Assembly: GCF_032444005.1 (NCBI RefSeq)
Contig: NC_091283.1
Coordinates: forward strand, 830,242,001 to 830,306,000
Direction of reading: 5' to 3'
Length of the DNA stretch: 64,000 nt
Source of the DNA: Ranitomeya imitator
Taxonomy: Eukaryota
Position 1 is the stretch's first letter. Each line of letters opens with the position of its first letter. Below the pieces are notes generated by a model, which made no database searches, had not been told where the DNA came from, and saw only the letters and a program-made list of their open reading frames with translations. The translations under genes were made by a program, and so were the position numbers. Below, piece by piece: positions 846 through 64,000 of the stretch.

Positions 846-24142
<23,297 letters not shown>

Positions 24143-28150: not shown

Positions 28151-28217
28151 ATGACCACCTACCTGTCCGAGGCGCAGGAGGACCGGCTGAGCGCCGCCAT
28201 GGAGAGCTACATGTTCG
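28151..28217 (+). CDS. NPM3: NPM3 exon 1 coding part
   Basis: gcagcatcATGA start context; ends TTCG|gtgagt. Confidence 0.9.
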
Positions 28218-32666: not shown

Positions 32667-33141
32667 AATGTTTTCAGCTCCCTGGAAGTTGTGCCTGTTC
32701 CATTTTGGGACGTCTCGTACATATTGCGTGTAGTTAGACCCCCCAGGTGATTTTAGGTTTTGCCCACCCGGTTTCTGAAATTTATCCAATCTGGGTTAAG
32801 GGTTTTATAAATTCACTATTTTCTTATCCTCTGTGTCCTAAAAGTCACATTAGTGGAAGACCCCCAGCGATCTGCAGAAAGGGCCAGTCCTGCTGGTTGC
32901 CCCCACTGGTGATGTCCTTTTGTTGGCTTCACTACTGATGGGACTTTTTATGACGTCTGCAGGACAGTTTTCAGATGAACATATTTCCCTTCTGGCTGAC
33001 GTGGAGCATTTCACACGAGACAAAACCGTGCTTTTTACAATCAATAGGTTTATTTTTGTATCGGAGATTTGATGTTGGAGACCGTTTATTTTTTTGTAGT
33101 TTACTGGGAAGGAAAGTGTTAAGGGTGAAGTTGAAATGCTA

Positions 33142-33147
33142 AATAAA
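33142..33147 (+). terminator. Probable NPM3 polyadenylation signal (AATAAA)
   Basis: First AATAAA about 480 nt after the stop codon, followed by T-rich sequence. It sits beside a genomic A-run, so it is not certain. Confidence 0.55.
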
Positions 33148-34690
33148 AAAAAAAAAATTAAACCTTTTTTTTTAGTTGATCCTGGAGAAGCAAAAACATG
33201 AGATTTGTTCTTTTGTGGCCGTATCCTTGGCGTAGGTCATCAATATCGGTAGGCTCGGACTTCCAGTACCCCCACCATAAACTTTTACTCTCTAGTAGTG
33301 GCCAAATGTGAACAGCGGTCAACAGCACAACTTTTTCACCATGTAGTATTCGCTCTGTGGCGCTGCAGTTTTTGTTGGAAGTGAATAGGGGCTGAGCTGC
33401 TGTACCCAGAAACGACCACTAGATGGCGAACAGAGCTGCACTTTGTGCCGTTCATTCATCCGCTGGTGCGGAGAACTTCTGATCGGCAGGTGTACAACGC
33501 ATCGGACCCCCCCGCCTATCTGATATTGATGACCATTCCGAAGAATAAGTCATCAATATCATAAGTCTGGAGAACCCCTTTCATGACCCGTTCAAAGCTG
33601 CCCACTTTGTATCAAGGCACTTGGAAGTATATTCTGTTTTCCTGTGCGGTCAGGACCCTGTTCAAGCTGTTTGTTTAGCCCTTGTTACTCTGGACATTAC
33701 CATCGATTCTGGTGCTTGGCTCTGTTTTTATGGAGAAACCAATATGTTTAAAAAAAATAAAAAATGGTGATGCAACTATTTTTGAATTTTTTATTCTCCC
33801 CCCCCCCCCCCCGTACCAAATTAATAATAATTGATTGCGAAGGGGCATTATTTGCATTGAGCAGCGTCCGATGTTGCAGACGCTTCGGTCAGCAGAGGAG
33901 CTGGATCCAGAAAACTGTTTCAAAATTCTATTTTTTTTAAGATAATTTTTTTTAATATTGGCAAAATTGTTCAATGCAATAAAGAATTGAATAAAAAGAA
34001 TAAAGTGTTTTGACGGCTGCTGTGACTTTGTCTGCTCTTTAAACTTCCTCTTAAGTCCTCTTTCCATTCCATGTTAGGACTTGATAATATTTGGAGTAAT
34101 GGTATACCGTATATTGCAGCTCTGGCTCAGTTTGTCATTTTTGGTCTAGGAAACCTAAAAACTATACAATAAATGGATCCAAGTTTTAAACAGAATCTGT
34201 CTCTAACAATTATTCTGTAGATATGGGGGTGTAATGGTGCATGGCTGCGGTACTGAAAGCGGCTTCTGGGAGAAAATTCACTTTATTCGTCCTAGGGATC
34301 GACCCTTACCATATGCGCCGTACACTGTATAGTGGCCGACCCTGGTATTGCAGTTTAGGTCCTATTCACTTTTCATACATGGCAACTTCGGTAGGTGGAG
34401 GTGTGGCCGTAGGACCCAAAAGTGTTATCCAACCTGTTTAAAAAAAAAAAAAAAAATGCTCCATAATTATTTCATGAAAAGGTTTTGTTTTTTTTTGCTC
34501 TTTGTTTTCTACTTTGTGTGCACAGTACTAGGATGACAATTGTAGGTCTCTAGAGATCAAAGTTTCGATTGAGAGAATCTGCAGGAAAGCTGCAATGTAC
34601 TAGATGGAGAAAAGTATGTGTCCCCCCCCCACCCCCTTGTATTCTGCTTGCAGGAGCTTTTCTGACCCCCCCCCCCCCCCCCCCCATTCT

Positions 34691-36335
34691 ACATCCATAG
34701 ACGTACATGCATGCATCCATAGACGTACGTGTAGGCGTGCATGCATCTACAGACATGCGTGCATCCATAGATGTACGTACGTGCATGCATCCATAGATGT
34801 ACGTGCATCCATAGACATACGTGCAGGCATGCATCCATAGACGTGCAGGCATGCATGCATCCATCCATAGACGTGCAGGCATGCATCCATAGACGTACGT
34901 GCATGCATGCGTCCATAGACGTACGTGCATGCATGCGTCCATAGACGTACGTGCATGCATGCATCCATAGACGTACGTGCATGCATGCATCCATAGACGT
35001 ACGTACGTGCAGGCATGCATCCATAGACGTACGTGCAGGCATGCATCCATAGACGTACGTGCAGGCATGCATCCATAGACGTACGTGCATGCATGCATCC
35101 ATAGACGTACGTGCATGCATGCATCCATAGACGTACGTGCATGCATCCATCCATAGACGTACGTGCATGCATCCATCCATAGACGTACGTGCATGCATCC
35201 ATCCATAGACGTGCATGCATGCATCCATAGACGTACGTGCATGCATGCATCCATAGACGTACGTGCATGCATGCATCCATCCATAGACGTGCAGGCATGC
35301 ATCCATAGACGTACGTGCAGGCATGCATCTATAGACGTACGTGCAGGCATGCATCTATAGACGTACGTGCAGGCATGCGTCCATAGACGTACGTGCAGGC
35401 ATGCGTCCATAGACGTACGTGCAGGCATGCGTCCATAGACGTACGTGCAGGCATGCATCCATAGACGCACGTACGTGCATGCGTCCATAGACGCACGTAC
35501 GTGCATGCGTCCATAGACGTACATGCATGCATCCATCCATAGACGTACGTGCAGGCATGCATCTATAGACGTACGTACGTGCAGGCATGCATCTATAGAC
35601 GTACGTGCAGGCATGCGTCCATAGACGTACGTGCAGGCATGCGTCCATAGACGTACGTGCAGGCATGCGTCCATAGACGTACGTGCAGGCATGCATCCAT
35701 AGACGCACGTACGTGCATGCGTCCATAGACGTACATGCATGCATCCATCCATAGACGTGCAGGCATGCATCCATAGACGTACGTGCAGGCATGCGTCCAT
35801 AGACGTACGTGCAGGCATGCGTCCATAGACGTACGTGCAGGCATGCGTCCATAGACGTACGTGCAGGCATGCGTCCATAGACGTACGTGCAGGCATGCGT
35901 CCATAGACGTACGTGCAGGCATGCGTCCATAGACGTACGTGCAGGCATGCATCTATAGACGTACGTGCAGGCATGCATCCATAGAAGTACGTGCAGGCAT
36001 GCGTCCATAGACGTACGTGCAGGCATGCGTCCATAGACGTACGTGCAGGCATGCATCCATAGACGCACGTACGTGCATGCGTCCATAGACGTACATGCAT
36101 GCATCCATCCATAGACGTACGTGCAGGCATGCATCTATAGACGTACGTGCAGGCATGCGTCTATAGACGTACGTGCAGGCATGCGTCCATAGACGTACGT
36201 GCAGGCATGCGTCCATAGACGTTCGTGCAGGCATGCGTCCATAGACGTACGTGCAGGCATGCATCCATAGACGCACGTACGTGCATGCGTCCATAGACGT
36301 ACGTGCATGCATCCATCCATAGACGTGCATGCATC
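34691..36335. repeat. About 1.64-kb satellite, 26-bp base unit ATCCATAGACGTACGTGCAGGCATGC with variants
   Basis: Direct reading; explains all the MHAC/MPAR periodic ORFs. Confidence 0.97.
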
Positions 36336-38547
36336 TGCAGAGTGGTGACTGCATATTCAATGGCTCCAGCTCTTCTGGGAAGGATTTATACAAGATTTTT
36401 GAGGTGTCTGAATTTTTGACCCTTCATCCAGAAGAGCTTTTGTGGGGTCAGATCCTGATGTTGGGGGTCCGGGCTCACAATCTCCGGTCTGGGTGTTGGA
36501 TGGGGCTGAGGTCCGGGCTCTGTGCGGCCGCTCATGTTCCCCCTCCATGTCTGTATGGAGCTTGTGCACTGGGCGCTGTCCTGGGGAACAGAAAAGGGCG
36601 AACCCCAAACTGTTCCCACAACCATGGAAGCTACAATTGTCCACAAAGTCTGGTGCTGAAGAACTGAGATTTCCCTTCACTGGAGCTGAGCGGCCAAGCT
36701 GCCCCCTGATAACCGCCCATAGCATTATCCTCCTCCACCATCAGCATATTGCATCGGATGTGTTAAACTATCGTGCTTTGTCAGTTTCTCCAATGAAAAC
36801 TAGACCTCGTCCTGCAAAAAAACAAAAGCAACCCCCTGTATAGCTATATCAAAGGAGAATAATAAAGGTTGTGAAAAGCTCTGGATCCCCAGATCCTCAT
36901 CTCTCTCCCCTGTGATCATCTGTCTGGGAGAGTGCAGAGACCCCCACACATATCAATCTTTATGTGAGTGGGTCTGGCAGAGATTAGTCTATTGTGTATG
37001 GAGGTTTTATCGGTCAATACCATTGTATCCAGCCCAGACAATTCTGTGTCTCTTCTCTCCGTCACTTTGCTACAATGTATCAGTCTGCACCTCACAGATA
37101 CAATTGTTGCAAGCCCCCAAAAGAAATGGAGAAGTTCTCTAAGTATATTAGGAAGTCAATGAACTTTTCTCATTACTTACAGAATTTTACTTCCGCAATG
37201 ATCCTCCTGAAGGATTTTGGTTCATCTTAGGAATTTTGACCAAGTAAAATTAGAATTTACTCAGGATGTCGGAGTCTCTGTAGGAACAACGCTCCCGAGA
37301 ATCCATTAATGAGCTCTAGAGATCGGTTTTGTTAACGAGCTTCATAATTGACGTAGCCAAGAAATCGGTCTCCGCGGGTCAGATCTGGAGAAGAAAATAA
37401 TCTAATTGTTTCCTCATTAAAACTTTGTATCGTGGAACCTGAAGAAAAGCTCGTACACGGCAGCTTCGGAGAATCGCGTCTGCAGTCTCTCCTTGATGGA
37501 TACGGAGACCTTTGAAGACGTTATTTTAGACTTAATAGAATGTATTTTTGTTATTGAGTTTTATTAAAAATGTACAACCATTCGGCTTTTACGGTCTCCG
37601 TTTTCCTTCACGTTACTGGCTGCAGAATGAGTAAACTTGTAAACCATTAGTGAGCTCTTTCTGACAAGCTCCGTCCTCACTGCTGATTTATGACCACCTC
37701 AAGGTGGAGCTGAACTTTGAAGACAATTTTCTTTTACTAATGCATTTTGGGCTAAAAATAATTTTTGCAAATGGGTTTCATTAAAAAAAAATTCCACTGT
37801 TTTAGTTTCTGTTTTCGCAGCAGAATGAGTTAACTGAGGATCTGTCGGCAAGCTTCCTGGGATAGGAAGTTTATCAATCTTTTATCTGTCTTTTCCTGAT
37901 CTCCTTTCTTCTTATTTATGATCAAAGTTGATCTGACCTTTGTTGCGGTCATTAATCATCACAGATAAGCTCAGTAAAAGACAAGTGAAAGAGTTACAAA
38001 CTTTTCCTTCCATACTAGATCACTGATAGATTCTTAGTTAACTCATTCTTCAGCCAGCAATGTGCAGGGAAACAAAGAGTCTAAAAGTACCAAATGTATG
38101 CAAAGTTTTAAAAGAAACCCTAATGCAAAAATTATTTTTAGACGAAAAATTAAAAAAAGAAATGAAAAATATCTATTGATGCATTTCTCAAAGTCACCTG
38201 ACCACTGCAGCCAATCACAGGCCATAGTGGTCCGATGGCTCCAAAACCGCTCTGGAAAAAGATGGAGACACAAACGCACAGAGATCTTCTGATTTCTAGT
38301 AAGTGTTATGTCTCGCCTGAAAGTGAGTAAATTAAATGTTTTTCTCTCACTCGAAATCTACACTCCTCAGTATGGCTGTACATTGTCCTCCTCCGAGACA
38401 GGAGAGCAGGAATCCCTACTGTGTGTGTGCTGTGTATGAGAGGCATCATGGCAGCCAGCCTCTACCCACTAACTCAGGGAAAACTGAAAACTAGAGTTGG
38501 AACTTACAGAGGGCAAAACTAGTGAAAGATGCAAAAATAAATCCTAG

Positions 38548-38815
38548 AATGTTAGAGTTGGAAGGGACCTCCAGGGTCATCGTGTCCGACCCCCTGCTCA
38601 ATGCAGGATTCACTAAACCATCTCAAACTGATGTCTGTCCAGCCTCTGAAGACTTCCATTGAAGGAGAACTCACCACCTCTCGCGTCCGCCTGTTCCACT
38701 CATTGATCACCCTCACTGTCAAAAAGTTTTTTCTAGTATCCAATCTGTATTTTGACCCTTTCAGTTTCATTCCATTGCTTCTCGTGTTTCCATGTGCAAC
38801 TGTGAATAATGATAC
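38548..38815 (-). mobile_element. CR1 3'-end fragment
   Basis: TRSNGMKL...RKNFLTVRVINEWN...VVSSPSMEVF. Confidence 0.82.
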
Positions 38816-39246
38816 ATGGTCCCTGTCAGCTTGTGTTCTTCCCACAGTGCCCCCCTAATGCCATCTGGCCAAACCGGCCGCCCACATGATTTATGATGCA
38901 TTAGATGAGACCACCTTATTCCATTGCTTCATGGTCCAATTCTGATTCTTAGAAACCTGACCTTCTGTCACTGAGTGACTCTTTGGTTCCCTAGTACTTG
39001 ACCCATTGTGTTTTCCTTGAGTCCTTGGAGCTTGTCTCCTTGAGCAGACTTTCATTTGACTTAAAGGACTTGTACACCTTCTCACAATTTTTCCTAAATT
39101 CAAAGCTAAGCAACTTTATAAATAGTCTTCATTAAACATTTTCCACCATTTTGCTGCTTCAGAGTGTCTGTTTTATCCAGCTGAGCACTTTACAAAACTT
39201 CCTCCTTCGCCTCATTGGGGGACACTGCCCGTGGTGTATGCTGCTG

Positions 39247-39621
39247 CAGTATACACCCTCCTGCTGGCTCTCGGCTCCTCCCCTGCAGTATACACCTGCT
39301 GGCTCTCGGCTCCTCCCCTGCAGTGTACACCCTCCTGCTGGCTCTCGGCTCCTCCCCTGCAGTATACACCCTCCTGCTGGCTCTCGGCTCCTCCCCTGCA
39401 GTATACACCCTCCTGCTGGCTCTCGGCTCCTCCCCTGCAGTATACACCCTCCTGCTGGCTCTCGGCTCCTCCCCTGCAGTATACTCCCTCCTGCTGGCTC
39501 TCAGCTCCTCCCCTGCAGTATACACCCTCCTGCTGGCTCTCCGCTCCTCCCCTGCAGTATACACCCTCCTGCTGGCTCTCAGCTCCTCCCCTGCAGTATA
39601 CACCCTCCTGCTGGCTCTCAG
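39247..39621. repeat. 39-bp minisatellite (10 copies) inside the left ITR of the second DIRS
   Basis: Unit CAGTATACACCCTCCTGCTGGCTCTCGGCTCCTCCCCTG starting at 39247, 39286, 39321, 39360, 39399, 39438, 39477, 39516, 39555 and 39594. Confidence 0.95.
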
Positions 39622-39982
39622 CTAACCAGTTCTTGCTTAGTGTCTGTAGGAGTCACTGTGTCTATGGCGCCCTACGGCAGCTCCGCCCACCTTTTCTGGC
39701 ACGAGAGCGCTCAGTTTTCTCGGCCACTACAACGCCCCTCACTTCTACCGCTGGTATCGCTCCCGCCGGCTGCAGAAAATTAGGCCCCGGTTTGGGCCTA
39801 TTCATGGAAGTCTCGAGGCTCTGCCCACATCGTGCATGTCGCTCCGGCCCCGAATTGGCGCTTCTCGCTCTCTGCGAGATTTTATCACATGTGCAACTCC
39901 CGGTGGCCATCTTGGTCCACCCGGCCGGCTCACACAGGGACGACGATTTTGCACTAAAGGGGCACAACGACTCTGCAACAAT

Positions 39983-40137
39983 AACCAGTATTCCCTGGTC
40001 TTAAAGGCACATGACCAGTATTCCCTGGTCTAAAAGGCACATGGCCAGTATTCCCTTGTCTAAAAGGCACATGACCAGTATTCCCTGGTCTAAAAGGCAC
40101 ATTACCAGTATTCCCTGGTCTTAAAAGCACATGACCA
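39983..40137. repeat. 30-bp tandem repeat (about 5 copies) within the second DIRS
   Basis: Unit ACCAGTATTCCCTGGTCTAAAAGGCACATG. Confidence 0.9.
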
Positions 40138-45490: not shown

Positions 45491-46420
45491 ATGGAGTGGT
45501 CAAACCTCACCGTCACTGACTTCGTTCTCCTCGGCTTCCATGAGCTTCCAGACTTCCAGTTGGTTTTCTTTTTCATATTTCTGGTCACTTATGTCGCAAC
45601 GTTGGTTGGAAATTTATTAACAACTGGTCTATTTTGCATTGACCCTCATTTCCACAGTCCCATGTATATACTCCTGTGTAACATGTCAGTACTGGATATG
45701 TCCTTCACCTCAATGGTTCTACCCAAGTTATTGGACATCTTTCTAACTGGGAACAATGTCATCTCCTACCATGGTTGTATGGCTCAGGTTTTCTTTTTCG
45801 TGGTGCTCATAGTGTCGGAATACTTCATCCTGGCTGCCATGGCTTATGATCGTTACGTGGCCATCTGTCATCCCCTTCGTTACTCTTATTTCATGAGCCT
45901 GCAGGTCTGTTTCTGGATGACATGGACATCTTGGAGCATAGGAGTCCTTGAGGGCATTCTTTATGTGATTCTAATATCATCTTGTACATTTTGTAGGTCA
46001 AATAAAGTAGACCATCTTTTCTGTGACTTAAAGCCTCTAATGAAGCTTTCTTGTAGCAGCACACAGACAATAGAGACAATAATACTTGTACTTGGGTCCA
46101 TCATTGGCTTTATTCCCTCGGTCATGACCTTGGTGTCCTACATCTATATCATCTCTGCAATCTTGAAGATTAACTCTAAAGAAGGAAGACACAAAACCTT
46201 CTCCACCTGCTCCTCACACCTCACAGTCATCCTCTTGTTTTACGGAACGGTCCTCGGCATGTACATGAGGCCAAAGTCCAGTTATTCCATGGACCAAGAC
46301 AAGGTGTTTGCCATCTTGTATTCCGGAGTCATTCCAATGCTCAACCCTCTCATTTACAGCTTGAAAAATCAGGAGGTGAAGAAAGCTCTGTGCAGAATAA
46401 AGAAACAATTGTTTTTTTAA
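45491..46420 (+). CDS. Olfactory receptor, class II-type 7TM GPCR, intact, 309 aa (OR-A)
   Basis: Single-exon ORF with N-glycosylation site [44 protein letters not shown] and [12 protein letters not shown]. Confidence 0.96.
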   Translation: MEWSNLTVTDFVLLGFHELPDFQLVFFFIFLVTYVATLVGNLLTTGLFCIDPHFHSPMYILLCNMSVLDMSFTSMVLPKLLDIFLTGNNVISYHGCMAQVFFFVVLIVSEYFILAAMAYDRYVAICHPLRYSYFMSLQVCFWMTWTSWSIGVLEGILYVILISSCTFCRSNKVDHLFCDLKPLMKLSCSSTQTIETIILVLGSIIGFIPSVMTLVSYIYIISAILKINSKEGRHKTFSTCSSHLTVILLFYGTVLGMYMRPKSSYSMDQDKVFAILYSGVIPMLNPLIYSLKNQEVKKALCRIKKQLFF

Positions 46421-46448
46421 CTGAAGACTATATCAAACATAATATATA

Positions 46449-49839: not shown

Positions 49840-49935
49840 CAGTGGGGAAAAAAGTGTTTACTCAGCCACCAATTGTGGATGTTCTCCCACTTAAAAAGAT
49901 GAGAGAGGCCTGTAATTGACATCATAGGTAGACCA
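49840..49935. mobile_element. Isolated Tc1-type terminal fragment
   Basis: TA-CAGTGGGGAAAAAAGTGTTTACTCAGCCACCAATTG resembles Tc1 ends; no transposase follows. Confidence 0.5.
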
Positions 49936-50161
49936 CAACCATACATATTAGAGTGGAGGATTATTTTTACAACGTTTCCTTTTTAGGAACAAAAAAAAAG
50001 ACATATTTTATCAACTAAGTGTCTATGACCAACTTCAGATCCACTTTTATGAGAATATAAAGTTATTCGAACCATAGCACGGATTTCTTACCCACACCTC
50101 AGAATACCATAAAAAAAGTTGTACGGCCATATGTCCAGCAAAGTCCAGTCATTACGTAGCG

Positions 50162-51086
50162 CTAAGGCTGGTTTCACATTGGCGTTTTTTGGGGTGCGTT
50201 TTTGCGGTAAAAAACGCAAAAAAACGCATGGTGAAAAAACGCATGTAAACGCGTGTAAACGCTGCGTTTTTTTGACGCATGCGTTTTTGCATGTGGTAAA
50301 AAAAACGCGGCGTTTTGACGCGTTTACATGCGTTTTTACATGCGTTTGCGTTTTTTAAATGCATGCTGAGAAATGTGTGACAGCTGCCAATCATCAAAAA
50401 AAAGTAAAAAACCCACNNNNNNNNNNNNNNNNNNNNNNNNNNNNNNNNNNNNNNNNNNNNNNNNNNNNNNNNNNNNNNNNNNNNNNNNNNNNNNNNNNNN
50501 NNNNNNNNNNNNNNNNNNNNNNNNNNNNNNNNNNNNNNNNNNNNNNNNNNNNNNNNNNNNNNNNNNNNNNNNNNNNNNNNNNNNNNNNNNNNNNNNNNNN
50601 NNNNNNNNNNNNNNNNNNNNNNNNNNNNNNNNNNNNNNNNGGTAGGGTTAGGGGTAGGTTTAGGGTTAGGGGTAGGGTTAGGGGTAGGGTTAGGTTCCCT
50701 TTATCACCTTTATGTTGGGGGGTGGCATATCAGTGTGTTTTCTGGTTTTTTAATAAAAAAACGCATGCGTTTTTTACCGCAAAAAACGCATGCACCAAAA
50801 AACGCATGCGTCCCCATTGACTCCAATGTATTTTTTGACCCCAAAAAAACGCATGAAAACGCATGCGTTTTTTTTTGGTCCAAAAAACGCTTCTAAAAAT
50901 ACTACAAGTAGCATTTCAGAAAATGAACGCATGCAGTAAAAAAACGCATGCGTCAAAAAACGCGACTAAACGCGTACACAAAAAAACGCATGCGTTTTCA
51001 ATGTTAAAGATAGGGAAAAAAAACGCATGCGTTTTTTTGAAAAAAAACGCTGCAGACAAAAACGCAAGTGTGAAACCACCCTAAGT
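50162..51086. mobile_element. Palindromic MITE (AAAACGC-rich) containing G-rich TTAGGG/GTAGGG repeats and spanning the gap
   Basis: Inverted ends GGCTGGTTTCACA and TGTGAAACCACCC; repeated AAAACGCATGCG. Confidence 0.7.
50417..50640. other. Assembly gap (224 N)
   Basis: Run of N. Confidence 0.99.
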
Positions 51087-51189
51087 CTGTTTACCCTAGC
51101 GTTTTTAAGGGATCATTAAATTCTAGTAGTCATATTTTTGGCCATGTCTTTTTTTTTATTTTGTCCCTTACATTGATTCAACCTTAAAC

Positions 51190-53355
51190 ACAATTATATT
51201 TTTGAACCTTTTCCATTGTCATAGATTTCCTTGAAACATACAACTCTGCCCTTCACCTCTCCAAACAAGCCTATTTCACCGCATTCATCACTGCACTATC
51301 CAACAATCCAAAATGACATTTTTCATTCCCTCCTCAGTCCAAGAGTGCAGGCCCCCACTATCGACCTCAGAGCTGGCAATCTGGACAATTATTGCAATGA
51401 AAAAATTGACCATATCCGACAGGAAATTTTCTCTCAATCCCCTAGCATCATGCATTCTCCTTTCTCCTACACTCCATGTAGCTCACTTTCTGTCTTTGAA
51501 CTGGCCACGGAAGAAGAGGTTACCTGGATCCTCAAATCTTCTCTCCCTACTACCTGCACCAATGACCCTATTCCCTCACATCTCCTTCAATCCCTTTCCC
51601 CACCTGTGACCACTCACCTAACTAAAATATTTAATCTCTCTAATCAGGTAACTTTTCTTCCTCCTTTAAACATGCCAACATACATCCATTACTTAAAAGA
51701 CCATCTCTCGACCAGAACTGTGCTGCTAAATGCAGACCTGTCTTTAATCTTCCTTTCATCTCTAAACACCTGGAACGCCTGGTCCACTCCCGTCTAATCC
51801 ACTATCTCTCAGACCACTCTCTTTTTGACCCATTAAAATATGGCTTCCACTCTTTACATTCTATTAAAACTGCCCTTACTAAAATCTCTAACAATCAACT
51901 GATGGCTAAATCCAAAGGTCACTGCTCCCTGGTGATCTCCTGGATCTCTGCAGCATTCGACACTGTGGATCACCAGCTCCTCACTATGCTCCATGCTATC
52001 GTCCTCAAGGGCAGCATTCTCTCCTGGTTCTCCTCTGACCGATCCTTCACTGTATCTTTTGCTGGTTCCTCTTCCTTTCATCTTCCCCTTACTGTCGGGG
52101 TTCCTCGAGGATCAGTCCTAGGTCCCCTCCTCTTCTCCTTGTATACTGCCCCTATTAGGAAAACAATATGTAGATTAGATTTTCAGTACTATTTCTATGC
52201 TGATGACACCTAATTATACACCTTCATATAAAATACCAGTGATTGTTTTTCCTCTGTCTCTAACATTATGTCCTCCCTCTAAAACTGAATCTCTCAAATA
52301 CTGAACTCCTGTGTTTCCTTCCTCCACTAGCTTTCCCAAACCCAATATTGCCATTTCCTTGTGTGATTCCACCATTACTCCCCAGCAACATGCTCGCTGC
52401 CTTGGTGTCATACTTGATTAATATTGTTCATACACTCCCCACATCCGATCACTTGCTCATGTCCATCTACACCTCAAAAACACCTTTAGAATTCCACCTT
52501 TTCTTAACTTTGACTCTGCAAAAACTCTTACTGTGGCTCTTATTCATTCCCATTTAGACTATTGCACTGTCTACTAATCGGTCTCCCTGTTACTAAACCC
52601 TCCCCTCTCCAATCGATCCTGAATGCAGCAAACAGGATCATAATCTTTTCCAACCGCTGCACCGATGCCTCTGCCCTGTGCCAGTCGTTGCACTGGTTGC
52701 CCATCCAATATAGATGTTAATATAAAGTTATCACTCTCACCCATAAAGCGCTCCATGGTTCAGCACCACCCTACATCTCCTCCCTCTTCTCAGTCTACCA
52801 CCTAACCTGTGCCTCTGGTTCTGCTAATGACCTAAGATTAACATCCTCAATAATCTGAACCTCCCACTCTCCTCTCAAAGACTTCTCAAGAGCTGCGTCA
52901 GTTCTCTGGAATGCAATGCCCAAGAAAATTCGATCAATACCCAAAACCTATAGTTCTAAGCATGGTCAAAAAATTGCACTTCTTTAGACTGGCCTATCGC
53001 ATCCCCTCACTTATGTAGCTAGCTATTCCTGTTTTACCCTTACAAAATTTTCCTCCAAATCAGGTTCCTCCATGCACTTAATAGCCCTGTGTGTCTGTAC
53101 TGTACATGCACTGGGTGGTTCATGCTGAGTTATTTGAATCCCCTATTTATTATAATAATGGCTGGACCATACAAGCATTTTTGTTACCATTTCTTCATAG
53201 ATTGTAGCTTGTGAGCACCAGGGCCCTCACTCCTTGGGGAATCTGTTGAATTATGTGTTGCTCCGTTAAGTCTTTATTGTCTGTACAAGTCCCCTATGAA
53301 ATATAAAGAGTTGTGGAATATATTGGAGCTATAGAAATAAAACTGATTATTCTCG
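51190..53355 (+). mobile_element. L2/CR1-group LINE relic, multiple stops and frameshifts
   Basis: DPIPSHLL, SAAFDTVDHQLL, GVPRGSVLGPLLFSLY and YADDT fragments; AATAAA and (ATT) tail near 53340. Confidence 0.85.
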
Positions 53356-54315
53356 TTATCATTGGACAACGCCAGCATCTCATCTCCTCTAGGAACAAAA
53401 GTCTGGGCATGTTGAAATTAAACTTGCACGATCCTTCTTTACCCAATATTTGTCATCAGGAGGCAGTAGGGAGGCCTTCATACACACCTGACAGATAAAT
53501 CAGAAGGTCTGGAAAAATTTTGGCTAAAGTGTAGAAGTGAAGCGCTTACAAGTCCACTTTCAATATCAATAACTTGATGATTACCCTGCACAAACAGAAA
53601 AAAAGATTGAACAAAAAAAGTTCTTACAGAGCACTTCCAACCACACTCCAGCAGAAGTATATTATCATCTAATGTAGATGTTTTTATTTTCTTTATTCAT
53701 ATTTTTCTATATTATTTTACTATATTATATTATTTTCTAAATTATTATTTGTTGCTATTAAATAAATTGAAGATTTCCTGAAACGCGTCAACTCAAATCT
53801 TATTTTTTTAATTGACATTTAAAAAAAAAAAATGTATTTACTAAATAATGCAAGAAGATTGGAGAGAAATGATGCTTATATTCTATAAACTTTATATCAT
53901 TATTGGAGACCTGAGGTCGGATTCAAATAAAGCTCTTGGCGAGATGGGGGGCACTATTCTGGTTCCCCCCTTTAACAAGTGCATACCTTTTTTACAAGCG
54001 CACATTGTTGGTGGATATCATGATTGTTTGGCTGGTTTTTTTTTTGTATTTTGTGATAATCACATATTTTCTCCTTACTAATAATAATTGTGTGAAATTC
54101 TCTAATTATTTTTATTATACATAATTACATTTAGTTGATAATTGCCTTATGGTTCCCAGGAGCTTTACAAATCAACATCTCGAATCTCCAAAGTGAACTC
54201 TCCTTAGATACACATTGTATAAATCCACCATAGAGACCCTCTGCTCTCCATAAGACATCCATGCATCTTCGCGAATCACCGATCGTACAAAAGATGTTTG
54301 TCTCATCAGAGGGTA

Positions 54316-55295
54316 ATGGAGACAATAAACCTCACCGTCACTGACTTCGTTCTCCTCGGCTTCCATGAGCTTCCAGACTTCCAGTTGGTTTTCTTTTTCA
54401 TATTTCTGGTCATCTATGTCGCAACGTTGGTTGGAAATTCATTAACAACTGGTCTATTTTGCATTGACCCTCATTTCCACACTCTCATGTATATACTCCT
54501 GTGTAACATGTCAGTATTGGATATGTCCTTCACCTCAATGATTCTACCAAAGTTATTGAACATCTTTCTAACTGGGAACAATGTCATCTCCTACCATGGT
54601 CGTATCGCTCAGGTTTTCTTTTTTGTGGTGCTCATAGTGTCGGAATACTTCATTCTGGCTGCCATGGCTTACGATCGTTACGTGGCCATCTGTCATCCCC
54701 TTCATTACTCTTATTTCATGAGCCTGCAGATCTGTTTCTGGATGGCATGGACATCTTGGAGCATAGGAGTCCTTGAGGGCATTTTCTTCATCATTCTGAT
54801 ATCATCTTGTACATTTTGTAGGTCAAATGAAGTAGACCATCTCTTCTGTGATATGAAGCCTCTAATGATACTTTCTTGTAGCGACACACAGACTATAGAA
54901 ATGGTAATATTTGTTCTTGGTGTCATCATTGGCTTTGTCCCCTCAAACATGACCTTGGTGTCCTACATCTATATCATCTCTACAATCTTGAAGATTAACA
55001 GGAAGGAAGACACAAAACCTTCTCCACCTGCTCCTCACACCTCACAGTCATCCTCTTGTTTTACGGAACGGTCCTCGGCATGTACATGAGGCCAAAGTCC
55101 AGCTATTCCATGGACCAGGACAAGGTGTTTGCCATCTTGTATGCCGGAGTCATTCCAATGCTCAACCCTCTCATTTACAGCTTGAAAAATCAGGAGGTGA
55201 AGAAAGCTCTATGCAGAATAAAGAAAAAAACTATATTTTGCCAGGCTACGCTAAATATAAAACTAGAAATCAAAGCCATGTTTTCCAACATTTAA
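54316..55295 (+). pseudogene. Olfactory receptor pseudogene (OR-B)
   Basis: Paralogue of OR-A starting METINLT at 54316. A net 4-nt deletion at about 55000 (aac-ag-gaagga versus aac-tctaaa-gaagga) shifts TM6-7 out of frame. The conserved TM3 Cys is Arg (YHGRIAQ), and HTPMY is HTLMY. Confidence 0.9.
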
Positions 55296-56489: not shown

Positions 56490-57335
56490 CAGTGACATTA
56501 TACACAGGTGCTCTGTATATAGTATAGCATATAGTGTCAGTGTACAGGTAATGCAGTGATCACCAGTGACATTACACACAGGAGCTCTGTACACAGTGTC
56601 AGTGTACAGGTAATACAGGGATCACCAGTGACATTATACACAGGAGCTCTGTATATAGTGTCAGTGTACAGGTAATACAGAGATCACCAGTGACACTATA
56701 CACAGGAGCTTGTATATAGTGTCAGCTTACAGGTAATACAGTGATCACCAGTGACATTATACACAGGCGCTCTGCATACAGCTTATAATGTGCAGTTAAT
56801 ACAGGGATCACTGGAGACATTATACCCAGTAACTCTGTATATAGTGTATAATGTACAGGTAATACAGGGATCACCAGTGGCATTATACACAGTAGCTCAG
56901 TATATAGTGTCAGTGTACAGATAATACAGTGATCACATGTGACATTATACACAGGAGCTCTGTACACAGCTTATAATGTGCAGGTAATACAGGGATAACT
57001 GGAGACATTATACCCAGTAACTCTATATATAGTGTATTATGTACAGGTAATACAGGGATCACCAGTGACATTATACACAGGAGCTCTGTATACAGTATCA
57101 GTGTACAGGTAATATAGTGATCACCAGTGACATTATACACAGGAGCTCTGTATATAGTGTCAGTGTACAGGTAATACATAGATCACCAGTTACATTATAC
57201 ACAGGAACTCTGTATATAGTGTCAGTGTACAGGTAATACAGGGATCACCAGTGATATTATACACACTAGCTCTGTATATAGTGTCAGTGTACATGTAATA
57301 CAGTGACATTATACACAGGAGCTCTGTATATAGTG
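56490..57335. repeat. About 62-bp minisatellite (about 13 units)
   Basis: Unit CAGTGACATTATACACAGGAGCTCTGTATATAGTGTCAGTGTACAGGTAATACAGTGATCAC with variants. Confidence 0.9.
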
Positions 57336-57559
57336 TTCAGAGACACCTGCACAAATATGGACCATTAAAAAAGTAAAGCATATTACAGCAGTAAATGCTC
57401 TAATTGCCCCCTACAGTAATTATGTCCCCCACTTGCCACAATAAACTAATAATGTATGTTCCTCATTCCTGCTCCAATATAGTAATTAAGTCCCTCATTC
57501 TGGTCCACTTTATTTAATAATGTTCCGCATCTTGGGCATTTATGTCACTTTCCTTGGCT

Positions 57560-58105
57560 GGCTCATACGTCCCTTGGCCTGGCTGAAGTCCTATTATGTC
57601 CCTTGGTTTGACTGCCCCCCTTATGTCCCTTAGCCTGAATGGCCCCCTTTATATCCCTCAGCCTGGCTGGCCCCTCCATATGTCTATTGGCCTGGTTGGC
57701 CCTCCCATATGTCCTTTGGCCTGGCTGGCCCTCCATAAGTCCCTTGGCCTGGATGGCCCCACAAATGTCCCTTGGCCTGCCTGGCCTTGCATGTGTCTTG
57801 CCTGCCTGGCCCCCCTATATCCCTTGGTCTGGCTGGGTCACCAATATGTCCCTTGACCTTGCTAGCCCCTCATATGTCCCTTGGCATGGCTGCTTCCACA
57901 AATATCCATTGGCTTGGCTGGCCCCCATATGTCCCTTGACTTAGCTGTTCTCCCATATGTCCATTGGTCTGGCTGGCCCCCCATATGTCCCTTGGCTTGG
58001 CTGGCACCCCATTATGTCCTTTGGCCTGGCTGGCTCCCATTATGTCTCTTGGCCTGGCTGTCTCCCATTATGTTCCTTGGCCTGGCTGCCCCCCATGTCC
58101 CTGAC
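57560..58105. repeat. About 28-30-bp degenerate minisatellite
   Basis: Recurrent ATGTCCCTTGGCCTGGCTGGCCCC. Confidence 0.85.
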
Positions 58106-60358
58106 ACTTGACGCTATTTTTCTCTTAATGTATTTTTGGGGTTTTGAATGACTAAAAAGTAAAAAAAAAGTAAACTAAAGTCATACATATATTCATTTTC
58201 TTTATCAGACGACTTATAAATGATGATCTACATGGCACAGAGCCATCAGATTTCCACCATCTGATTTATTGAATTGAGAATTTATTGGACCCTCTTAATC
58301 ATTTCTCTTCAGTGTTGGTTTTTCTAGGCTGTAGCATATTTTGAAACTGTTGGCTGAGAACGTAAATGTTCGGATAAATCCAAAGGAGACATTTTATTTC
58401 AAAAATGGAAATGAATATTCCCATTGAATATGATTTCCGTGGTTGTAGAAACTGTAGCCCTTTACCAGTGAATGTCCTGATTAGGAATTATAGCTATTTG
58501 TATAGAACAATTGTGGCCATACACAGTAGACTTACATCAACCAACACCCCGATTTCTGCCAACCATCTCATTATTCATTCACCGACTGGACCTTAAAGAA
58601 ATAAAAGCTGGATGTATAAAAAATGACAAACTTATTACTCACCTACCGTCACCCATCTGGATCCTTTGCTCTGCTCCGTGATCTGTGCTGTCATTGGGAC
58701 TGAAGACATCAACACTCAACCCCCGGGATTGTGCACTGATCAAAGTCACCTGACTGCTGCAGCCAATCACAATCCTCAGCAGTCTAGCGGCTGGTTGAAT
58801 GTTGATGTCTCTTGTCTTGGTGTAGATCTCGGAGCAGACAACTCCTTCAACTTTCCGTCCAAGCCAGAAGATAGACTATTTATTCAGTCTTGGATGGAAC
58901 ATCACGGCTACAGCCAACCACTGGCAAGTTGCATCCGCCATTAAAAGGAATGAGCAAGAGACTGTCAGGGAACACAGACAACAATGCAAAGGAGCAGAGC
59001 CGCTCTGGTGGGTGAGAATCTTCTCCTTTCTTTGTCTCTAGACCTCCATGGGCCCATAAGTAACATATCAATACTTGGCTGCCATCTTGGTCCACCTATG
59101 AAGCCGAGCGACAGCCATAGGAGATATCCACTATGAACTGTAATAAGCACATAGAAGAAGAGATCAGACATTCACAAGTTAAAGTACCCAACGGAGGATA
59201 CAAAATAAAGCAAGAGTAAATTAAAAGAATTAAAAAACATAAAAATGATTAAAAAAAAGAAAAGAAAAAAATCAAACATAAAAACTGAAATAACCCCCCT
59301 TAATTAAAATAATGACAAAAAAATAATATCTGGAAAATTCAGATCTATTAAAATGCAATTACAGGCATTATATGTGCCCCAAAAATACCAACAATAACTG
59401 CGGCTCAACTCTCATAAAATCAACCAGCATACAGTTCCATCGATTGAAAAATGACGGGTCTCAGAGAATGGTGACACAAACCAGTTTTGTTTCTTTTCTT
59501 TTTTTTTAACAGATTTCTACATTTTTTCATCACTTAAATAAAAGCGCTACAAGTTTGATACAGCTGTAATTTTAATAAAACAAAACCTAAAAAACAACGT
59601 CAGAATTGTGCGTTTTTGTCACCAATTCACCGCACTTGGATTTTTTTTTTCTGTTTTCCAGTACATTATATGAAAAAAAAAAACTGAGGAAGAAACTAAG
59701 GCTATATAACCTTTGAAAATTACTTGCTTGAGGACTTGTTTACACATTGTGGCTTTGCTGCTTTTTTTCTGTGAAAAAAAACAAACAAAACTTTTTTAAA
59801 ATTATTTTTCTCTTGGGGATTTAAGGGATCCAAGCATTTTTTCATATCTGCAACGTCATTTCTTTCGGAGTTTTTGCAGCGTTTTTCCACCCATTCAAAT
59901 GAATGGGAAAAAAGCACATAAAAACGCATAAAAAACAACCAAATCTGCTGCAAATACTCAACGTTTGCACATACACTTAGAAGGTCCTGATTTTGATGTA
60001 AGTCACTCGCAGAACTCACCGATACATAAAACTGTATATAATGCAACATCTTACAAATATTAAAGGAAACTTGTCACTTGATTCATACTGCCCAAACCAC
60101 GGGCAGCATGAATCAGATCCTGGCTGCATGATTGTAGCCAGGTATATTTTTCTTGGAAACGCTCCTTTAATATCCGGCAAGGAACCATGGAAGGAGACAA
60201 GACTAGTGCAGCTCTTCCCAGCACCGCTAGAGGTGATTGTCAGGCAGTGGCATAGATAAACTCTGTGTAAAATTGTGACCTGGGCCCCATCTGTATGTTG
60301 GTCAGGGGTATAGGCACTTGTAGATCTTATAAAGACATATTTGTTGGCCCCCCATGTA

Positions 60359-61460
60359 CAGTGGTATGTAAAGGTTTGGGCACCCCTGGTCAAAATCACT
60401 GTTATTGTACAGTTAAGCAAGCTGAAGATAAAAAATTCCCTAAAATGGCTAAAGTTAAAGATGACACATTTCCTTCAGATTTTAGGCCAAAATATATATT
60501 TTCAACATTTATGTTGTAAAATTACAAAAAAGGAAAATGGGCACCCTGCATGGTTAGTACCTAGAAGCACCCCTTATTGCAAGTATCACAGCTTGTAAAC
60601 AAGAGGCTTCCAATTCTTTTATTTTGGGGGATTTTCATCCATTTTTCCTTGGATAATTCTCCCAGTTCTGTGAGATTCCTGGGCCGTCTTGCATCCTCTA
60701 CTATTTTGAGGTCTAGCCACAGATTTTCAATGATGTTCAGACCAGGGGACTGTGAGGAGCATTGTAAAACTTCATTTTGCACCTTTTGAGGTCATCTATT
60801 ACAGATTTTGCCATGTGTTTAGGTTCATTATAAATTTGTAGAAGCCATCCTCTTCCTCTTTTCACCTTTAGTTTTTTTTTTTTACAGATGGTGTTATGTT
60901 TGCATCAAGAATTTGTTGACATTTCATTGAATCCATTCTTCCCTCTACCATTGTGTAATTGGCTGCAACACAACCCCAAACCATGATTGATCCACCCCAA
61001 TGCTTAATGGTTGGTGAGATGTTCTTTTTCTGAAATTCTGTGCTCTTTATTTCTCCACACATTCAGTGCCTTTGATCATTGTGGACACGGAGTTCTATTT
61101 TAACCTCATCTGTCCACAGAACTTGTTTCCAAAATGCATCAGGCTTGTTTAGATGTTCTTTTGCATACTTCTGATACAGAATTTTATGGTGAGGACACAG
61201 GAGAGGTTTTCTTCTGATGAATCTTCCATGAAGGCCATATTTGTGCAGGTGTTTCTGAACAGTAGAACAAAGTACCACAACTCCTGAGTCTGCTACATCT
61301 TTATGAAGGTCATTTTGCAGTTAAGCAGGGTTTCTGATATGCCTTTCTAGCAATCATGTAAGCAGCTCTCACTGAAATTTTGCTTGGTCTTCCAGACCTT
61401 ATCTTGACCTCCACTGTTCTTGTTAACTGCAACTTCTTAATTACATTTAGAACTGAGGTA
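60359..61460 (-). mobile_element. Tc1-family transposon relic
   Basis: TA-CAGTGGTATGTAAAGGTTTGGGCACCCC TIR; fragments SPGLNIIENLW, PTIKHWGGSIMVWG and WKQVLWTDEVKIE. Confidence 0.85.
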
Positions 61461-62098
61461 TTGCTGTCAATTATGTTAAATAATAGTCACCCTGGTTGGG
61501 TGTTTGCTTGTATTTTAATACTTTTTGTGAGACTACCTTCTAGTAGTTTTCCTGATATGGTTTTCTCCTGCGTTTTTGTGCCTGATATTAATTGCATTTT
61601 AGAATAAGTAAAGCTTAATGTGATTGTGAGATTTGGTCTAACACTTCGTAGTGGTGGAATATTCAGAAATTATTGACCATACATCATAGAGTTAAAAATA
61701 AAAGTGTAGTACTAGTGATTCTACCAAATATAGTTTCGATCTACTGAACTCTTCCAACTTGTCAGTTTCGATGAATTCTAGCCTTGACATCGCTTGATTT
61801 TTTTTTTTGAAATGCTATAAATAGTTATTCACTTTTTGGAGAGTTAAAATTATTTGCTATATCACTTTGTGGAATGTAATGATTAAGACATCTTAATTAT
61901 TAAATTTCTTGTCCTTCCCGGGAGTCGTTGTTTTAATTGCTAGTAAATTCAAACCTCTGGTGCATATTTCAATGGGATAAAGGTTCTATATATTCCTTGT
62001 ATTTTTCCATTGTCATTAAATAGAAACAACCATTTCTGCCATGTGTGAGATTACACGACTCAATTCTCGAAAGGAAATTATTCCTTTCATGTTGCTAA

Positions 62099-63028
62099 AT
62101 GGAGGTACAAAATTTCAGCCTTACTGAATTTGTTCTCCTCGGCTTCCATGAGCTTCCAGACTTCCAGTTGGTTTTCTTTTTCATATTTCTGGTCATCTAT
62201 GTTGCAACGTTGGTTGGAAATTTATTAACAACTGGTCTATTTTGCTTTGTTCCTCACTTCCACACTCCCATGTATATATTCCTGTGTAACATGTCTGTAT
62301 TGGATATGTCCTTCACCTCAATGGTTCTACCAAAGTTATTGGATATCTTTCTAACTGGGAACAATGTCATCTCCTACCATGGTTGTATCGCTCAGGTTTT
62401 CTTTTTCGTGGTCCTCATGGTGTCGGAATACTTCATCCTGGCTTCCATGGCTTATGATCGTTACGTGGCCATCTGTCACCCCCTTCGTTACTCTTATTTC
62501 ATGAGCCTGCAGGTCTGTTTCTGGATGACATTGGCGTCTTGGAGTATAGGAGTCCTTGAGGGCATTATGTACGCCAGTATAATATCATCTTGTACATTTT
62601 GTGAATCAAATGAAATTGACCATTTATTCTGTGATATAAAGCCTCTTGTAAAGCTTTCATGTAGTGATACACGGACCATAGAAACAGTGATACTTGGACC
62701 GAGTGCCATCATTGGCTTTTTTCTTTCAATTATGACCTTGGTGTCCTACATCTATATCATTTCTACAATTTTGAAGATTAACTCTAAAGAAGGAAGACAA
62801 AAAACCTTCTCCACCTGCTCCTCACACCTCACAGTCATCCTCTTGTTTTACGGAACGGTCCTCGGCATGTACATGAGGCCAAAGTCCAGCTATTCCATGG
62901 ACCAGGACAAGGTGTTTGCCATTTTGTATGCAGGAGTCATTCCAATGCTCAACCCTCTCATTTACAGCTTGAAAAATCAGGAGGTGAAGAAAGCTCTGTG
63001 CAGAATAAAGAAACAATTGTTTTGTTAG
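62099..63028 (+). CDS. Olfactory receptor, class II-type, intact, 309 aa (OR-C)
   Basis: Single-exon ORF with NFS sequon, [30 protein letters not shown] and [12 protein letters not shown]. Confidence 0.96.
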   Translation: MEVQNFSLTEFVLLGFHELPDFQLVFFFIFLVIYVATLVGNLLTTGLFCFVPHFHTPMYIFLCNMSVLDMSFTSMVLPKLLDIFLTGNNVISYHGCIAQVFFFVVLMVSEYFILASMAYDRYVAICHPLRYSYFMSLQVCFWMTLASWSIGVLEGIMYASIISSCTFCESNEIDHLFCDIKPLVKLSCSDTRTIETVILGPSAIIGFFLSIMTLVSYIYIISTILKINSKEGRQKTFSTCSSHLTVILLFYGTVLGMYMRPKSSYSMDQDKVFAILYAGVIPMLNPLIYSLKNQEVKKALCRIKKQLFC

Positions 63029-64000
63029 GTCATTGTTCACATGTCTGTTTGGCGTCCATGTATATTTGACTCCAGTAGAAAAAAAGACAAATGTGTAGAA
63101 AAATAGATACAAACACATTCCAAACTGAACTCAGAGTTTACACTTTTAACTGATTAAGTCTGAAAAGGAAATGTAATGTTGCTGTTTAAATAAGTAAAAT
63201 AAATAAGTGCTTATATAGGTGGAACTGTCAAATGGATACAATTAAAAATACAATCTTTGGCGTCAATCGGCATCTGATTTTACACCTTTAGTGTTCCATT
63301 GGTGCACAGTGCTAAAAATGAATTTATTAAACAGATGACAAAATAAATGATCCATTTGCAATCGACTTTAAAGGGAACCTGTCACCTAAAAAAAAAATGC
63401 TATGACCCTGCAGATATGAGGATAACCTGCAGGTTAATAGCATTCTGAACCTGCCTGGTGCCTGCATTTAGACCTATGCTGCCAGGAGAAAATTAACTTC
63501 AGTCCCTCCGACAGCGTTCAGGATCCAGTCATTAGGGCAACGCCAGTGGGTTCAGTCACGACTCTGTGTATGGAAAATGGGGGTGGAACCGCGTCCCCAG
63601 CACTGACTGACATCTGGCCCTAATGCTGAGCCCGGTCCTGCACCCTCTGATGACCTCCCCCTGATGCAGGGCAGGCGAGGATCGGACAGCGGGTTATGCC
63701 CGGCAGCGTCTCCTCCACCTGGGCAGCTTATTGGTCCACTCCCTTCTACGGCTCCATCCTCCACAGGCACACTGCGGGCTTATGGGTCCCATGGACAGGA
63801 AGACAATCCTCCCATCACTGGCAGGTTCCCTATCCACTGAAGCTTCTGCTAGAAGAAGTAACAGCACCAACTTCGAGGTTCGTCATCGGGAGTCTGGATA
63901 TCCAGCTGGTGGGATGACAGCTCCCACGCAGCCTGGTGAGTATTACTCCATGTCTTGTCCATTTCCTCCTATTTTAATGTCAAAAAGTTTAGAGGGCAGC

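What the first reader, a model, noticed from the sequence alone, without database searches (positions are those of the whole stretch)
32667..64000. Olfactory receptor cluster where FGF8 normally follows NPM3
Known: in human and mouse the order is OGA-NPM3-FGF8 on one strand, with FGF8 only several kb past NPM3 inside a conserved regulatory block. Seen: 31 kb downstream of NPM3 holds no FGF8-like exon that I could find, but three OR genes. The first OR lies before the N gap, so it is contiguous with NPM3. Inference: either an OR cluster has been inserted and expanded between NPM3 and FGF8, or the synteny block is broken here. Either would matter for FGF8 regulation and for how OR clusters are founded.
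Basis: partly seen in the sequence, partly recalled or inferred. Interest (0 to 1): 0.7.

Follow-up and report, generated by a model that had tools for sequence, protein, structure and literature searches.

The report
Frog smell-receptor cluster beside NPM3
In the mimic poison frog, and in at least two other families of hyloid frogs, a tandem cluster of olfactory receptor genes starts right after NPM3, where other vertebrates have FGF8; it is a real, lineage-specific change of gene order, but I could not find where FGF8 now lies.

Summary
The window is from an 854-Mb chromosome of Ranitomeya imitator. On the + strand it carries the last OGA exons, a complete NPM3 (stop at 32664-32666) and three class II-type olfactory receptor (OR) genes. 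OR1 and OR3 are intact; OR2 has a 4-bp frameshift deletion. No FGF-like reading frame lies in 32.7-64 kb.

It is not a misassembly:
- An older, independent R. imitator scaffold carries NPM3, an OR1-like and an OR3-like gene in ascending accession order.
- In Engystomops an OR cluster starts 5.4 kb after NPM3, and in Leptodactylus 6.6 kb after NPM3-like exons, on the same strand.

The arrangement looks derived. In the spadefoot Spea, the 10 kb after NPM3 holds no OR. Its single gene of this OR subfamily lies 3.58 Mb away on the same chromosome, between A2M-like genes. The subfamily has one or two copies in non-hyloid frogs and four to eight or more in hyloids, expanded family by family.

FGF8 could not be located because no FGF query could be obtained. 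"ORs intercalated between NPM3 and FGF8" and "larger break" therefore both stay open. The genes are already annotated. I found no paper describing the arrangement. Interest is modest.

The parts
23165..24138 (+). Last three coding exons of OGA (about 23165-23368, 23634-23808, 23999-24138)
   Evidence: Collinear blastn matches at 78-85% to the Spea OGA gene, called with PF07555 NAGidase. Reading frames seen. Pfam was blank on the short exon pieces.
28151..32666 (+). NPM3, five coding exons: e1 28151-28219, e2 about 29609-29707, e3 about 30750-30875, e4 about 31980-32072, e5 (acidic tail) about 32540-32666 including the stop
   Evidence: Pfam Nucleoplasmin on e3 and e4. tblastn with R. variabilis NPM3 (P0122) and R. 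imitator NPM3 (P0121), exon by exon. The exon-1 search returned exactly these proteins. Exons were not joined into a model.
34701..36333 (.). 26-bp tandem array, about 63 copies, in the NPM3-OR1 spacer
   Evidence: Tandem Repeats Finder. It explains the long repetitive ORFs at 34550-36134.
39244..39623 (.). 39-bp tandem array, about 10 copies
45491..46420 (+). OR1: intact 309-aa olfactory receptor, first gene after NPM3 (12.8 kb from the NPM3 stop)
   Evidence: It is 92% identical to a Dendrobates tinctorius OR. The exact protein is on record on the 854-Mb contig.
50417..50640 (.). Assembly gap (N), left unfilled
   Evidence: Both flanks are the same palindromic ACGCATGCG-rich repeat. The gene order across the gap is supported by the older scaffold.
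50641..50695 (+). Degenerate TTAGGG-like (telomere-type) repeat at the right edge of the gap
   Evidence: Seven overlapping matches, against 0.04 expected by chance. It is the only such site in the window.
51644..52210 (+). Reverse-transcriptase fragment of a LINE-type retroelement
   Evidence: Pfam RVT_1, E 2e-16.
54316..55245 (+). OR2: pseudogene with a 4-bp deletion near 55000, before TM6. The open frame ends at 55089 (257 aa).
   Evidence: DNA alignment with OR1 and OR3 and the two frames seen. The D. tinctorius orthologue P0002 is intact.
56529..57306 (.). 62/188-bp tandem array
57564..58096 (.). 28-bp tandem array
62099..63028 (+). OR3: intact 309-aa olfactory receptor
   Evidence: It shares a 90% cluster with CAJ0935137.1 of the older R. 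imitator scaffold.

Best explanation
This is a genuine olfactory receptor (OR) gene cluster that begins 12.8 kb downstream of NPM3 in Ranitomeya imitator. The position is inherited, not an assembly artefact.

Proposed history:
1. One gene of a frog-specific class II OR subfamily came to lie immediately 3' of NPM3, on the same strand. In the spadefoot Spea this gene is single-copy and sits 3.6 Mb from NPM3 on the same chromosome.
2. This happened before dendrobatid and leptodactylid frogs diverged.
3. The gene then multiplied by tandem duplication, separately in each family (birth-and-death evolution). In dendrobatoids four orthologue groups arose. Three are in this window and one of them (OR2) is now dead.

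The intact copies are under purifying selection and presumably work as ordinary odorant receptors.

FGF8 is not within 31 kb of NPM3. My best guess, which is inferred and not shown, is that the FGF8-FBXW4 block is still distal on the same chromosome, so the OR array is intercalated between NPM3 and FGF8.

My confidence differs by part: about 0.85 that the adjacency is real, derived and shared by hyloids, and about 0.5 for the intercalation. The figure given for the whole statement is 0.55.
For: Real genes:
- Pfam 7tm_4 at E 2e-48 and 6e-48 over the whole profile.
- dN/dS is 0.29-0.44 among the window copies and 0.14-0.19 against leptodactylid copies.

Not a misjoin:
- Engystomops L006 has a Nucleoplasmin gene ending at 4617 and the first OR at 10001, same strand. 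Its last two exons are 81% and 68% identical to the window's NPM3.
- Leptodactylus L001 has NPM3-like exons at 1535-3375 and then five tandem ORs.
- The older R. imitator 4.53-Mb scaffold carries CAJ0935129 (NPM3), CAJ0935131 (OR1-like) and CAJ0935137 (OR3-like).
- NPM3 and this OR subfamily sit on contigs of identical length, i.e. the same chromosome, in 15 frog species.

Derived state:
- In Spea, OGA-NPM3 lies at 29.75 Mb. The next 10 kb has no OR (tblastn blank) and no called gene.
- The Spea subfamily OR lies at 33.34 Mb, same strand, between two A2M-like genes.
- PMC2446394 lists Fbxw4, Fgf8, Npm3, Mgea5 together on X. tropicalis scaffold 238 and calls the linkage invariant in tetrapods.

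Expansion:
- In the tree the hyloid copies form one clade (SH-aLRT 99) with copies grouped by family.
- Spea, Bombina, Gastrophryne, Mantella and Pseudophryne each show a single copy.
- Paralogue dS is 0.13-0.23, against 0.54-0.63 to leptodactylids.
- Similarity between window copies ends within about 16 nt of the coding sequence.
Against: - FGF8 was never located, so 'between NPM3 and FGF8' is unproven.
- The Engystomops cluster runs at least 180 kb from NPM3. At its far end sits an OR of another family (39% identical, opposite strand). This fits a larger OR-rich region, or a more complex rearrangement, better than a simple single-gene insertion.
- A single inversion cannot explain the layout, because the OR and NPM3 are on the same strand in both Spea and the hyloids.
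- The A2M context is known only from Spea and could itself be the derived state.
- Mantella, Discoglossus and D. tinctorius look-ups showed no neighbours within 10 kb. The age of the event beyond dendrobatids plus leptodactylids is therefore open.
- The tree is a quick LG+G4 search.
- Copy counts come from the best 120 hits only.
Confidence: 0.55

Rival explanations
1. Synteny break. A larger intrachromosomal rearrangement separated NPM3 from FGF8 and joined NPM3 to an OR-bearing region. FGF8-FBXW4 now lies megabases away, or in another orientation, and not at the far end of this cluster.
For: - The Engystomops cluster extends at least 180 kb and contains a second, unrelated OR family on the opposite strand.
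- The Spea orthologue is on the same chromosome 3.58 Mb away, so material for an intrachromosomal rearrangement existed.
- A telomere-type repeat lies inside the cluster at 50641-50695. Such interstitial sites can mark old breakpoints; that link is from my own knowledge and was not tested here.
Against: - A single inversion would flip the OR relative to NPM3, yet both are on the same strand in Spea and in hyloids.
- No A2M-like exons accompany the ORs in the window or the other loci.
- No direct evidence on FGF8 either way.
Confidence: 0.35
2. Assembly artefact. The OR genes were joined to NPM3, or to each other across the N gap, by a misassembly.
For: - A 224-N gap lies between OR1 and OR2.
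- The contig to the right of the gap starts with a telomere-like repeat.
- The NPM3-OR1 spacer holds a 1.6-kb tandem array.
Against: - OR1 and NPM3 share one gap-free contig.
- The same NPM3-then-OR order is seen in Engystomops and (with degenerate NPM3-like exons) Leptodactylus.
- An independent R. imitator scaffold carries NPM3, an OR1-like and an OR3-like gene in ascending accession order.
- Both gap flanks are the same repeat type.
Confidence: 0.03
3. Ancestral arrangement. ORs of this subfamily already lay next to NPM3 in the frog or tetrapod ancestor, and Spea, Xenopus and amniotes lost or moved them.
For: - NPM3 and the subfamily are on the same chromosome even in Spea and Discoglossus.
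- The position in Discoglossus, Bombina, Pelodytes, Mantella, Gastrophryne and Pseudophryne relative to NPM3 is unknown.
Against: - Spea has no OR in the 10 kb after NPM3 and keeps its only copy 3.58 Mb away.
- Mantella's copy has no NPM3 exon within 10 kb.
- No Xenopus or amniote member of the subfamily appears among the best 120 hits.
- Published maps list Fgf8 next to Npm3 in X. tropicalis and amniotes.
Confidence: 0.07

Closest known systems
Canonical vertebrate block FBXW4-FGF8-NPM3-OGA(MGEA5)-KCNIP2 (Lbx1/Tlx1 paralogon; Wotton et al. 2008, PMC2446394)
   Same: OGA and NPM3 are present in the usual order and orientation. They are collinear with Spea.
   Different: FGF8 does not follow NPM3 within 31 kb. 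OR genes do. The paper describes the Fgf8-Npm3 linkage as invariant in tetrapods, and FGF-NPM pairs as marking the paralogous Lbx/Tlx loci (Fgf8-Npm3, Fgf17-Npm2, Fgf18-Npm1, Fgf24-Npm4).
Tandem OR gene clusters evolving by birth-and-death (class II OR expansions in tetrapods; Nei, Niimura and co-workers, cited from my own knowledge)
   Same: - Single coding exon of about 310 aa.
- Head-to-tail copies 8-9 kb apart.
- A mix of intact genes and a pseudogene.
- Lineage-specific copy number and purifying selection on intact copies.
   Different: Nothing unusual in the genes themselves. Only the address is unusual: directly 3' of a housekeeping gene, in a deeply conserved developmental block.
Spea bombifrons orthologous OR (P0039), on chromosome record CM049780.1
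   Same: It is in the same OR subfamily clade (SH-aLRT 99), on the same chromosome as NPM3, and on the same strand.
   Different: It is single-copy, flanked on both sides by A2M-like genes, and 3.58 Mb from NPM3 rather than 5-13 kb.

Membership tests
Vertebrate olfactory receptor (Pfam 7tm_4, rhodopsin-type GPCR) | Full-length match to the OR profile above the curated cut-off | tested here: met
   OR1 scores 166 bits and OR3 164.5 bits against a cut-off of 27, covering profile positions 1/2-276 of 280. OR2 covers only 1-205.
Vertebrate olfactory receptor (Pfam 7tm_4, rhodopsin-type GPCR) | Uninterrupted single coding exon of about 310 aa with the MAYDRYVAICxPL, KxFSTCxSHL and PMLNPxIY motifs | tested here: met
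   The motifs can be read directly in the OR1 and OR3 translations. OR2 fails this test through a 4-bp deletion.
Vertebrate olfactory receptor (Pfam 7tm_4, rhodopsin-type GPCR) | Expression in olfactory sensory neurons and odorant response | not testable with these tools
No expression data were seen.
NPM3 (nucleoplasmin-3) | Nucleoplasmin core domain plus an acidic C-terminal tract, downstream of OGA on the same strand | tested here: met
   Pfam PF03066 on exons 3 and 4. Exon-by-exon tblastn to annotated frog NPM3 proteins. Acidic tail at about 32540-32663. OGA exons lie upstream.
FGF8 present in 32667-64000 | A reading frame matching the FGF domain (PF00167) | tested here: not met
   The 30 stop-free stretches of 99 aa or more tested (repeat, OR-overlapping and gap-spanning frames left out) gave no FGF hit. 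Reading stretches of 70 aa or more by eye and motif patterns gave nothing. Very short 5' exons of FGF8 could not be excluded.
Conserved NPM3-OR adjacency in hyloid frogs | An OR of the same subfamily within about 15 kb 3' of NPM3, same strand, in other families | tested here: met
   Engystomops at 5.4 kb and Leptodactylus at 6.6 kb, after degenerate NPM3-like exons. For Bufo, Hyla, Dendropsophus, Eleutherodactylus and Rhinoderma only same-chromosome linkage is shown.

The most novel reading that the evidence does not exclude
The FGF8-NPM3 adjacency is kept in tetrapods and mirrored by FGF-NPM pairs at the paralogous vertebrate loci. Across the hyloid frog radiation it has been physically split by an OR array of about 180 kb or more, while FGF8 stays functional beyond it. 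If so, no essential FGF8 control element needs the NPM3 side. These frogs would then be a natural insertion experiment on the boundary of the FGF8 regulatory domain, and a dated example of how a new OR cluster is seeded from one relocated gene.
Probability: 0.45. Interest if true: 0.5.

Novelty: new member of a known kind. Interest (0 to 1): 0.35.

Why it matters
OR clusters are born, grow and die constantly, so another one is ordinary. The address is the unusual part. NPM3 and FGF8 are neighbours in tetrapods and in one of the duplicated teleost loci, and the paralogous pairs (FGF17-NPM2, FGF18-NPM1, FGF24-NPM4) are neighbours too (PMC2446394).

Three things follow from a clade-wide interruption of that pair:
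- It gives a datable founding event for an OR cluster: one gene in basal frogs, four to eight or more in hyloids.
- It bears on whether the FGF-NPM linkage is kept by regulatory constraint or by chance.
- It offers a natural test of where the FGF8 regulatory domain ends on its 5' side.

All of this depends on locating fgf8, which I could not do.

Tried and rejected
1. Locating FGF8. No tool gave me an FGF protein to search with, and I did not type one from memory. Patterns and Pfam scans found no FGF frame in the window or in loci L001-L008. Scan notes for this genome hold no note on FGF8 or FBXW4 apart from this finding itself.

2. Walking along the chromosome. R. imitator, D. tinctorius and Discoglossus records returned no DNA and no neighbours within 10 kb. 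All 12 context look-ups are used.

Later Pfam and cluster look-ups, made by reference, touched 51.2-55.1 kb.

4. Non-coding sequence shared after NPM3. None was found between the window and Spea, Engystomops or Leptodactylus, so no breakpoint could be placed.

5. A2M-like exons near the hyloid or Mantella ORs. None were found.

6. The careful mixture-model tree was killed by the sandbox. The tree used is the quick LG+G4 one.

7. NPM3 was searched exon by exon only. I did not build or search a joined spliced model.

8. The large representative protein search was not used.
Full report
**What is in the window.**
An exact look-up of OR3 places the window on an 854,142,487-bp record of assembly GCA_032444005.1. 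Annotated proteins name the species as Ranitomeya imitator. An earlier scan note on the same piece puts the window more than 792 Mb into that chromosome.

On the + strand the window holds, in order:
- The last OGA exons at 23165-24138. They are collinear at 78-85% with the Spea gene that carries the NAGidase domain.
- NPM3. Exons 3 and 4 hit Pfam Nucleoplasmin. Exon 1 retrieved the annotated NPM3 of R. imitator and R. variabilis. tblastn with those proteins lays out exons at 28151-28219, about 29609-29707, about 30750-30875 and 31980-32072. The acidic last exon runs to the stop at 32664-32666. I searched NPM3 exon by exon and did not build a joined model.
- Three OR genes. OR1 (45491-46420) and OR3 (62099-63028) are intact 309-codon frames that match Pfam 7tm_4 end to end. 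OR2 (54316-55245) carries a 4-bp deletion near 55000, outside any homopolymer. This shifts the frame before TM6. Its Dendrobates orthologue is intact.

The rest of 32.7-64 kb is tandem arrays and transposon debris, including an RVT_1 fragment.

**No FGF8 here.**
The 30 stop-free stretches of 99 aa or more that I tested in 32.7-64 kb, on either strand, gave no FGF-domain hit; frames that are tandem-repeat translations, overlap the ORs or span the gap were left out. Reading all stretches of 70 aa or more by eye gave nothing FGF-like. Short FGF-core patterns gave nothing credible. Tiny 5' exons cannot be excluded. The large last exon of FGF8 is absent.

**The gap.**
The N run at 50417-50640 was left unfilled. 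Both flanks consist of the same palindromic ACGCATGCG-rich repeat. The right-hand contig opens with 55 nt of degenerate TTAGGG-type repeat, the only such site in the window.

The order across the gap has independent support. An older R. imitator assembly has a 4.53-Mb scaffold with CAJ0935129 (NPM3), CAJ0935131 (a fragment clustering with OR1) and CAJ0935137 (clustering with OR3), in ascending accession order.

**Not an artefact, and not private to this species.**
- In Engystomops pustulosus, a Nucleoplasmin gene ends 5.4 kb before the first OR of the same subfamily, on the same strand. Its last exons are 81% and 68% identical to the window's NPM3. ORs of this subfamily continue for about 170 kb. 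About 177 kb from the first OR (about 182 kb from the NPM3 stop) there is an OR of another family, 39% identical, on the opposite strand.
- In Leptodactylus fuscus, NPM3-like exons precede five tandem ORs by 6.6 kb.

**Derived, and expanded.**
A quick maximum-likelihood tree of 67 ORs recovers the subfamily as one clade (SH-aLRT 99). Copy numbers differ sharply:
- One copy in Spea, Bombina, Gastrophryne, Mantella and Pseudophryne.
- Two copies in Discoglossus and Pelodytes.
- One hyloid clade (SH-aLRT 99) in which copies group by family, e.g. five in Leptodactylus, at least eight in Dendropsophus, and four orthologue groups in dendrobatoids.

OR1, OR2 and OR3 each have their own Dendrobates orthologue. 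A fourth R. imitator member (P0013) lies outside the window.

Other measures agree with this picture:
- Synonymous divergence among the window copies is 0.13-0.23, against 0.54-0.63 to leptodactylid copies. dN/dS is 0.14-0.44.
- Similarity between window copies stops within about 16 nt of the coding sequence. About 190 nt upstream of the start codon is conserved across species.

In Spea bombifrons, OGA-NPM3 lies at 29.75 Mb. The following 10 kb holds no OR and no called gene. The single subfamily OR sits 3,581,893 bp further on, on the same strand, between two A2M-like genes.

Wotton et al. 2008 (PMC2446394) list Fbxw4, Fgf8, Npm3 and Mgea5 together on X. tropicalis scaffold 238. They call the linkage invariant in tetrapods and show FGF-NPM pairs at the paralogous loci. 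No paper in the library combines fgf8, npm3 and olfactory receptor.

**Reading.**
Shown:
- An OR cluster directly 3' of NPM3 is real.
- It is shared by at least dendrobatids and leptodactylids.
- It is absent from the same place in Spea.
- It grew by family-specific tandem duplication.

Inferred:
- A single founder gene was relocated on its own chromosome. A single inversion cannot do this, because the strand is unchanged.
- The intact copies function as odorant receptors.

Open:
- Where FGF8 lies. I rate intercalation between NPM3 and FGF8 at about 0.5 and a larger break at about 0.35.
- The second OR family at the far end of the Engystomops cluster cautions against a simple one-gene story.

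**Verdict.**
The genes are ordinary and already annotated. The change of neighbourhood appears undescribed and is of modest interest until fgf8 is placed.

Noticed in passing
window 50641-50695: A degenerate TTAGGG-type (telomere-like) repeat sits exactly at the right edge of the assembly gap, inside the OR cluster. Its orientation does not fit a chromosome end, so it is an interstitial site. It could be a relic of an old break or simply the cause of the gap.
   Followed up: partly
L001:965-3375 (Leptodactylus fuscus CM063213.1): The NPM3-like exons of Leptodactylus are only 35-46% identical to other hyloid NPM3, against 67-81% for Engystomops. A large tandem repeat fills an intron. No L. fuscus NPM3 protein appeared among the 120 homologues listed. 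It may be a decaying or fast-evolving NPM3.
   Followed up: partly
L002 (Spea bombifrons CM049780.1, 33.33 Mb): The single Spea member of this OR subfamily is embedded between two large alpha-2-macroglobulin-like genes on the same strand. That is an odd home for an OR.
   Followed up: no
window 8422-13642 (- strand) and 18510-22915 (+ strand): Inside OGA introns lie a LINE-type element with long open frames (1257 aa and 379 aa) and a long retroelement-like set of ORFs (627 aa and others). They look young. I did not examine them.
   Followed up: no
window 54122-54316 and 61912-62099; L003, L005, L001: About 190 nt just upstream of the OR start codons is conserved at about 78-83% between Ranitomeya, Engystomops and Leptodactylus copies, although the rest of the flanks has diverged. 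It is probably 5' UTR and splice-acceptor or promoter-proximal sequence.
   Followed up: no
window 50100-51080: A block of short palindromic repeats rich in AAAAACGCATGCGTTTTT surrounds the gap on both sides.
   Followed up: partly
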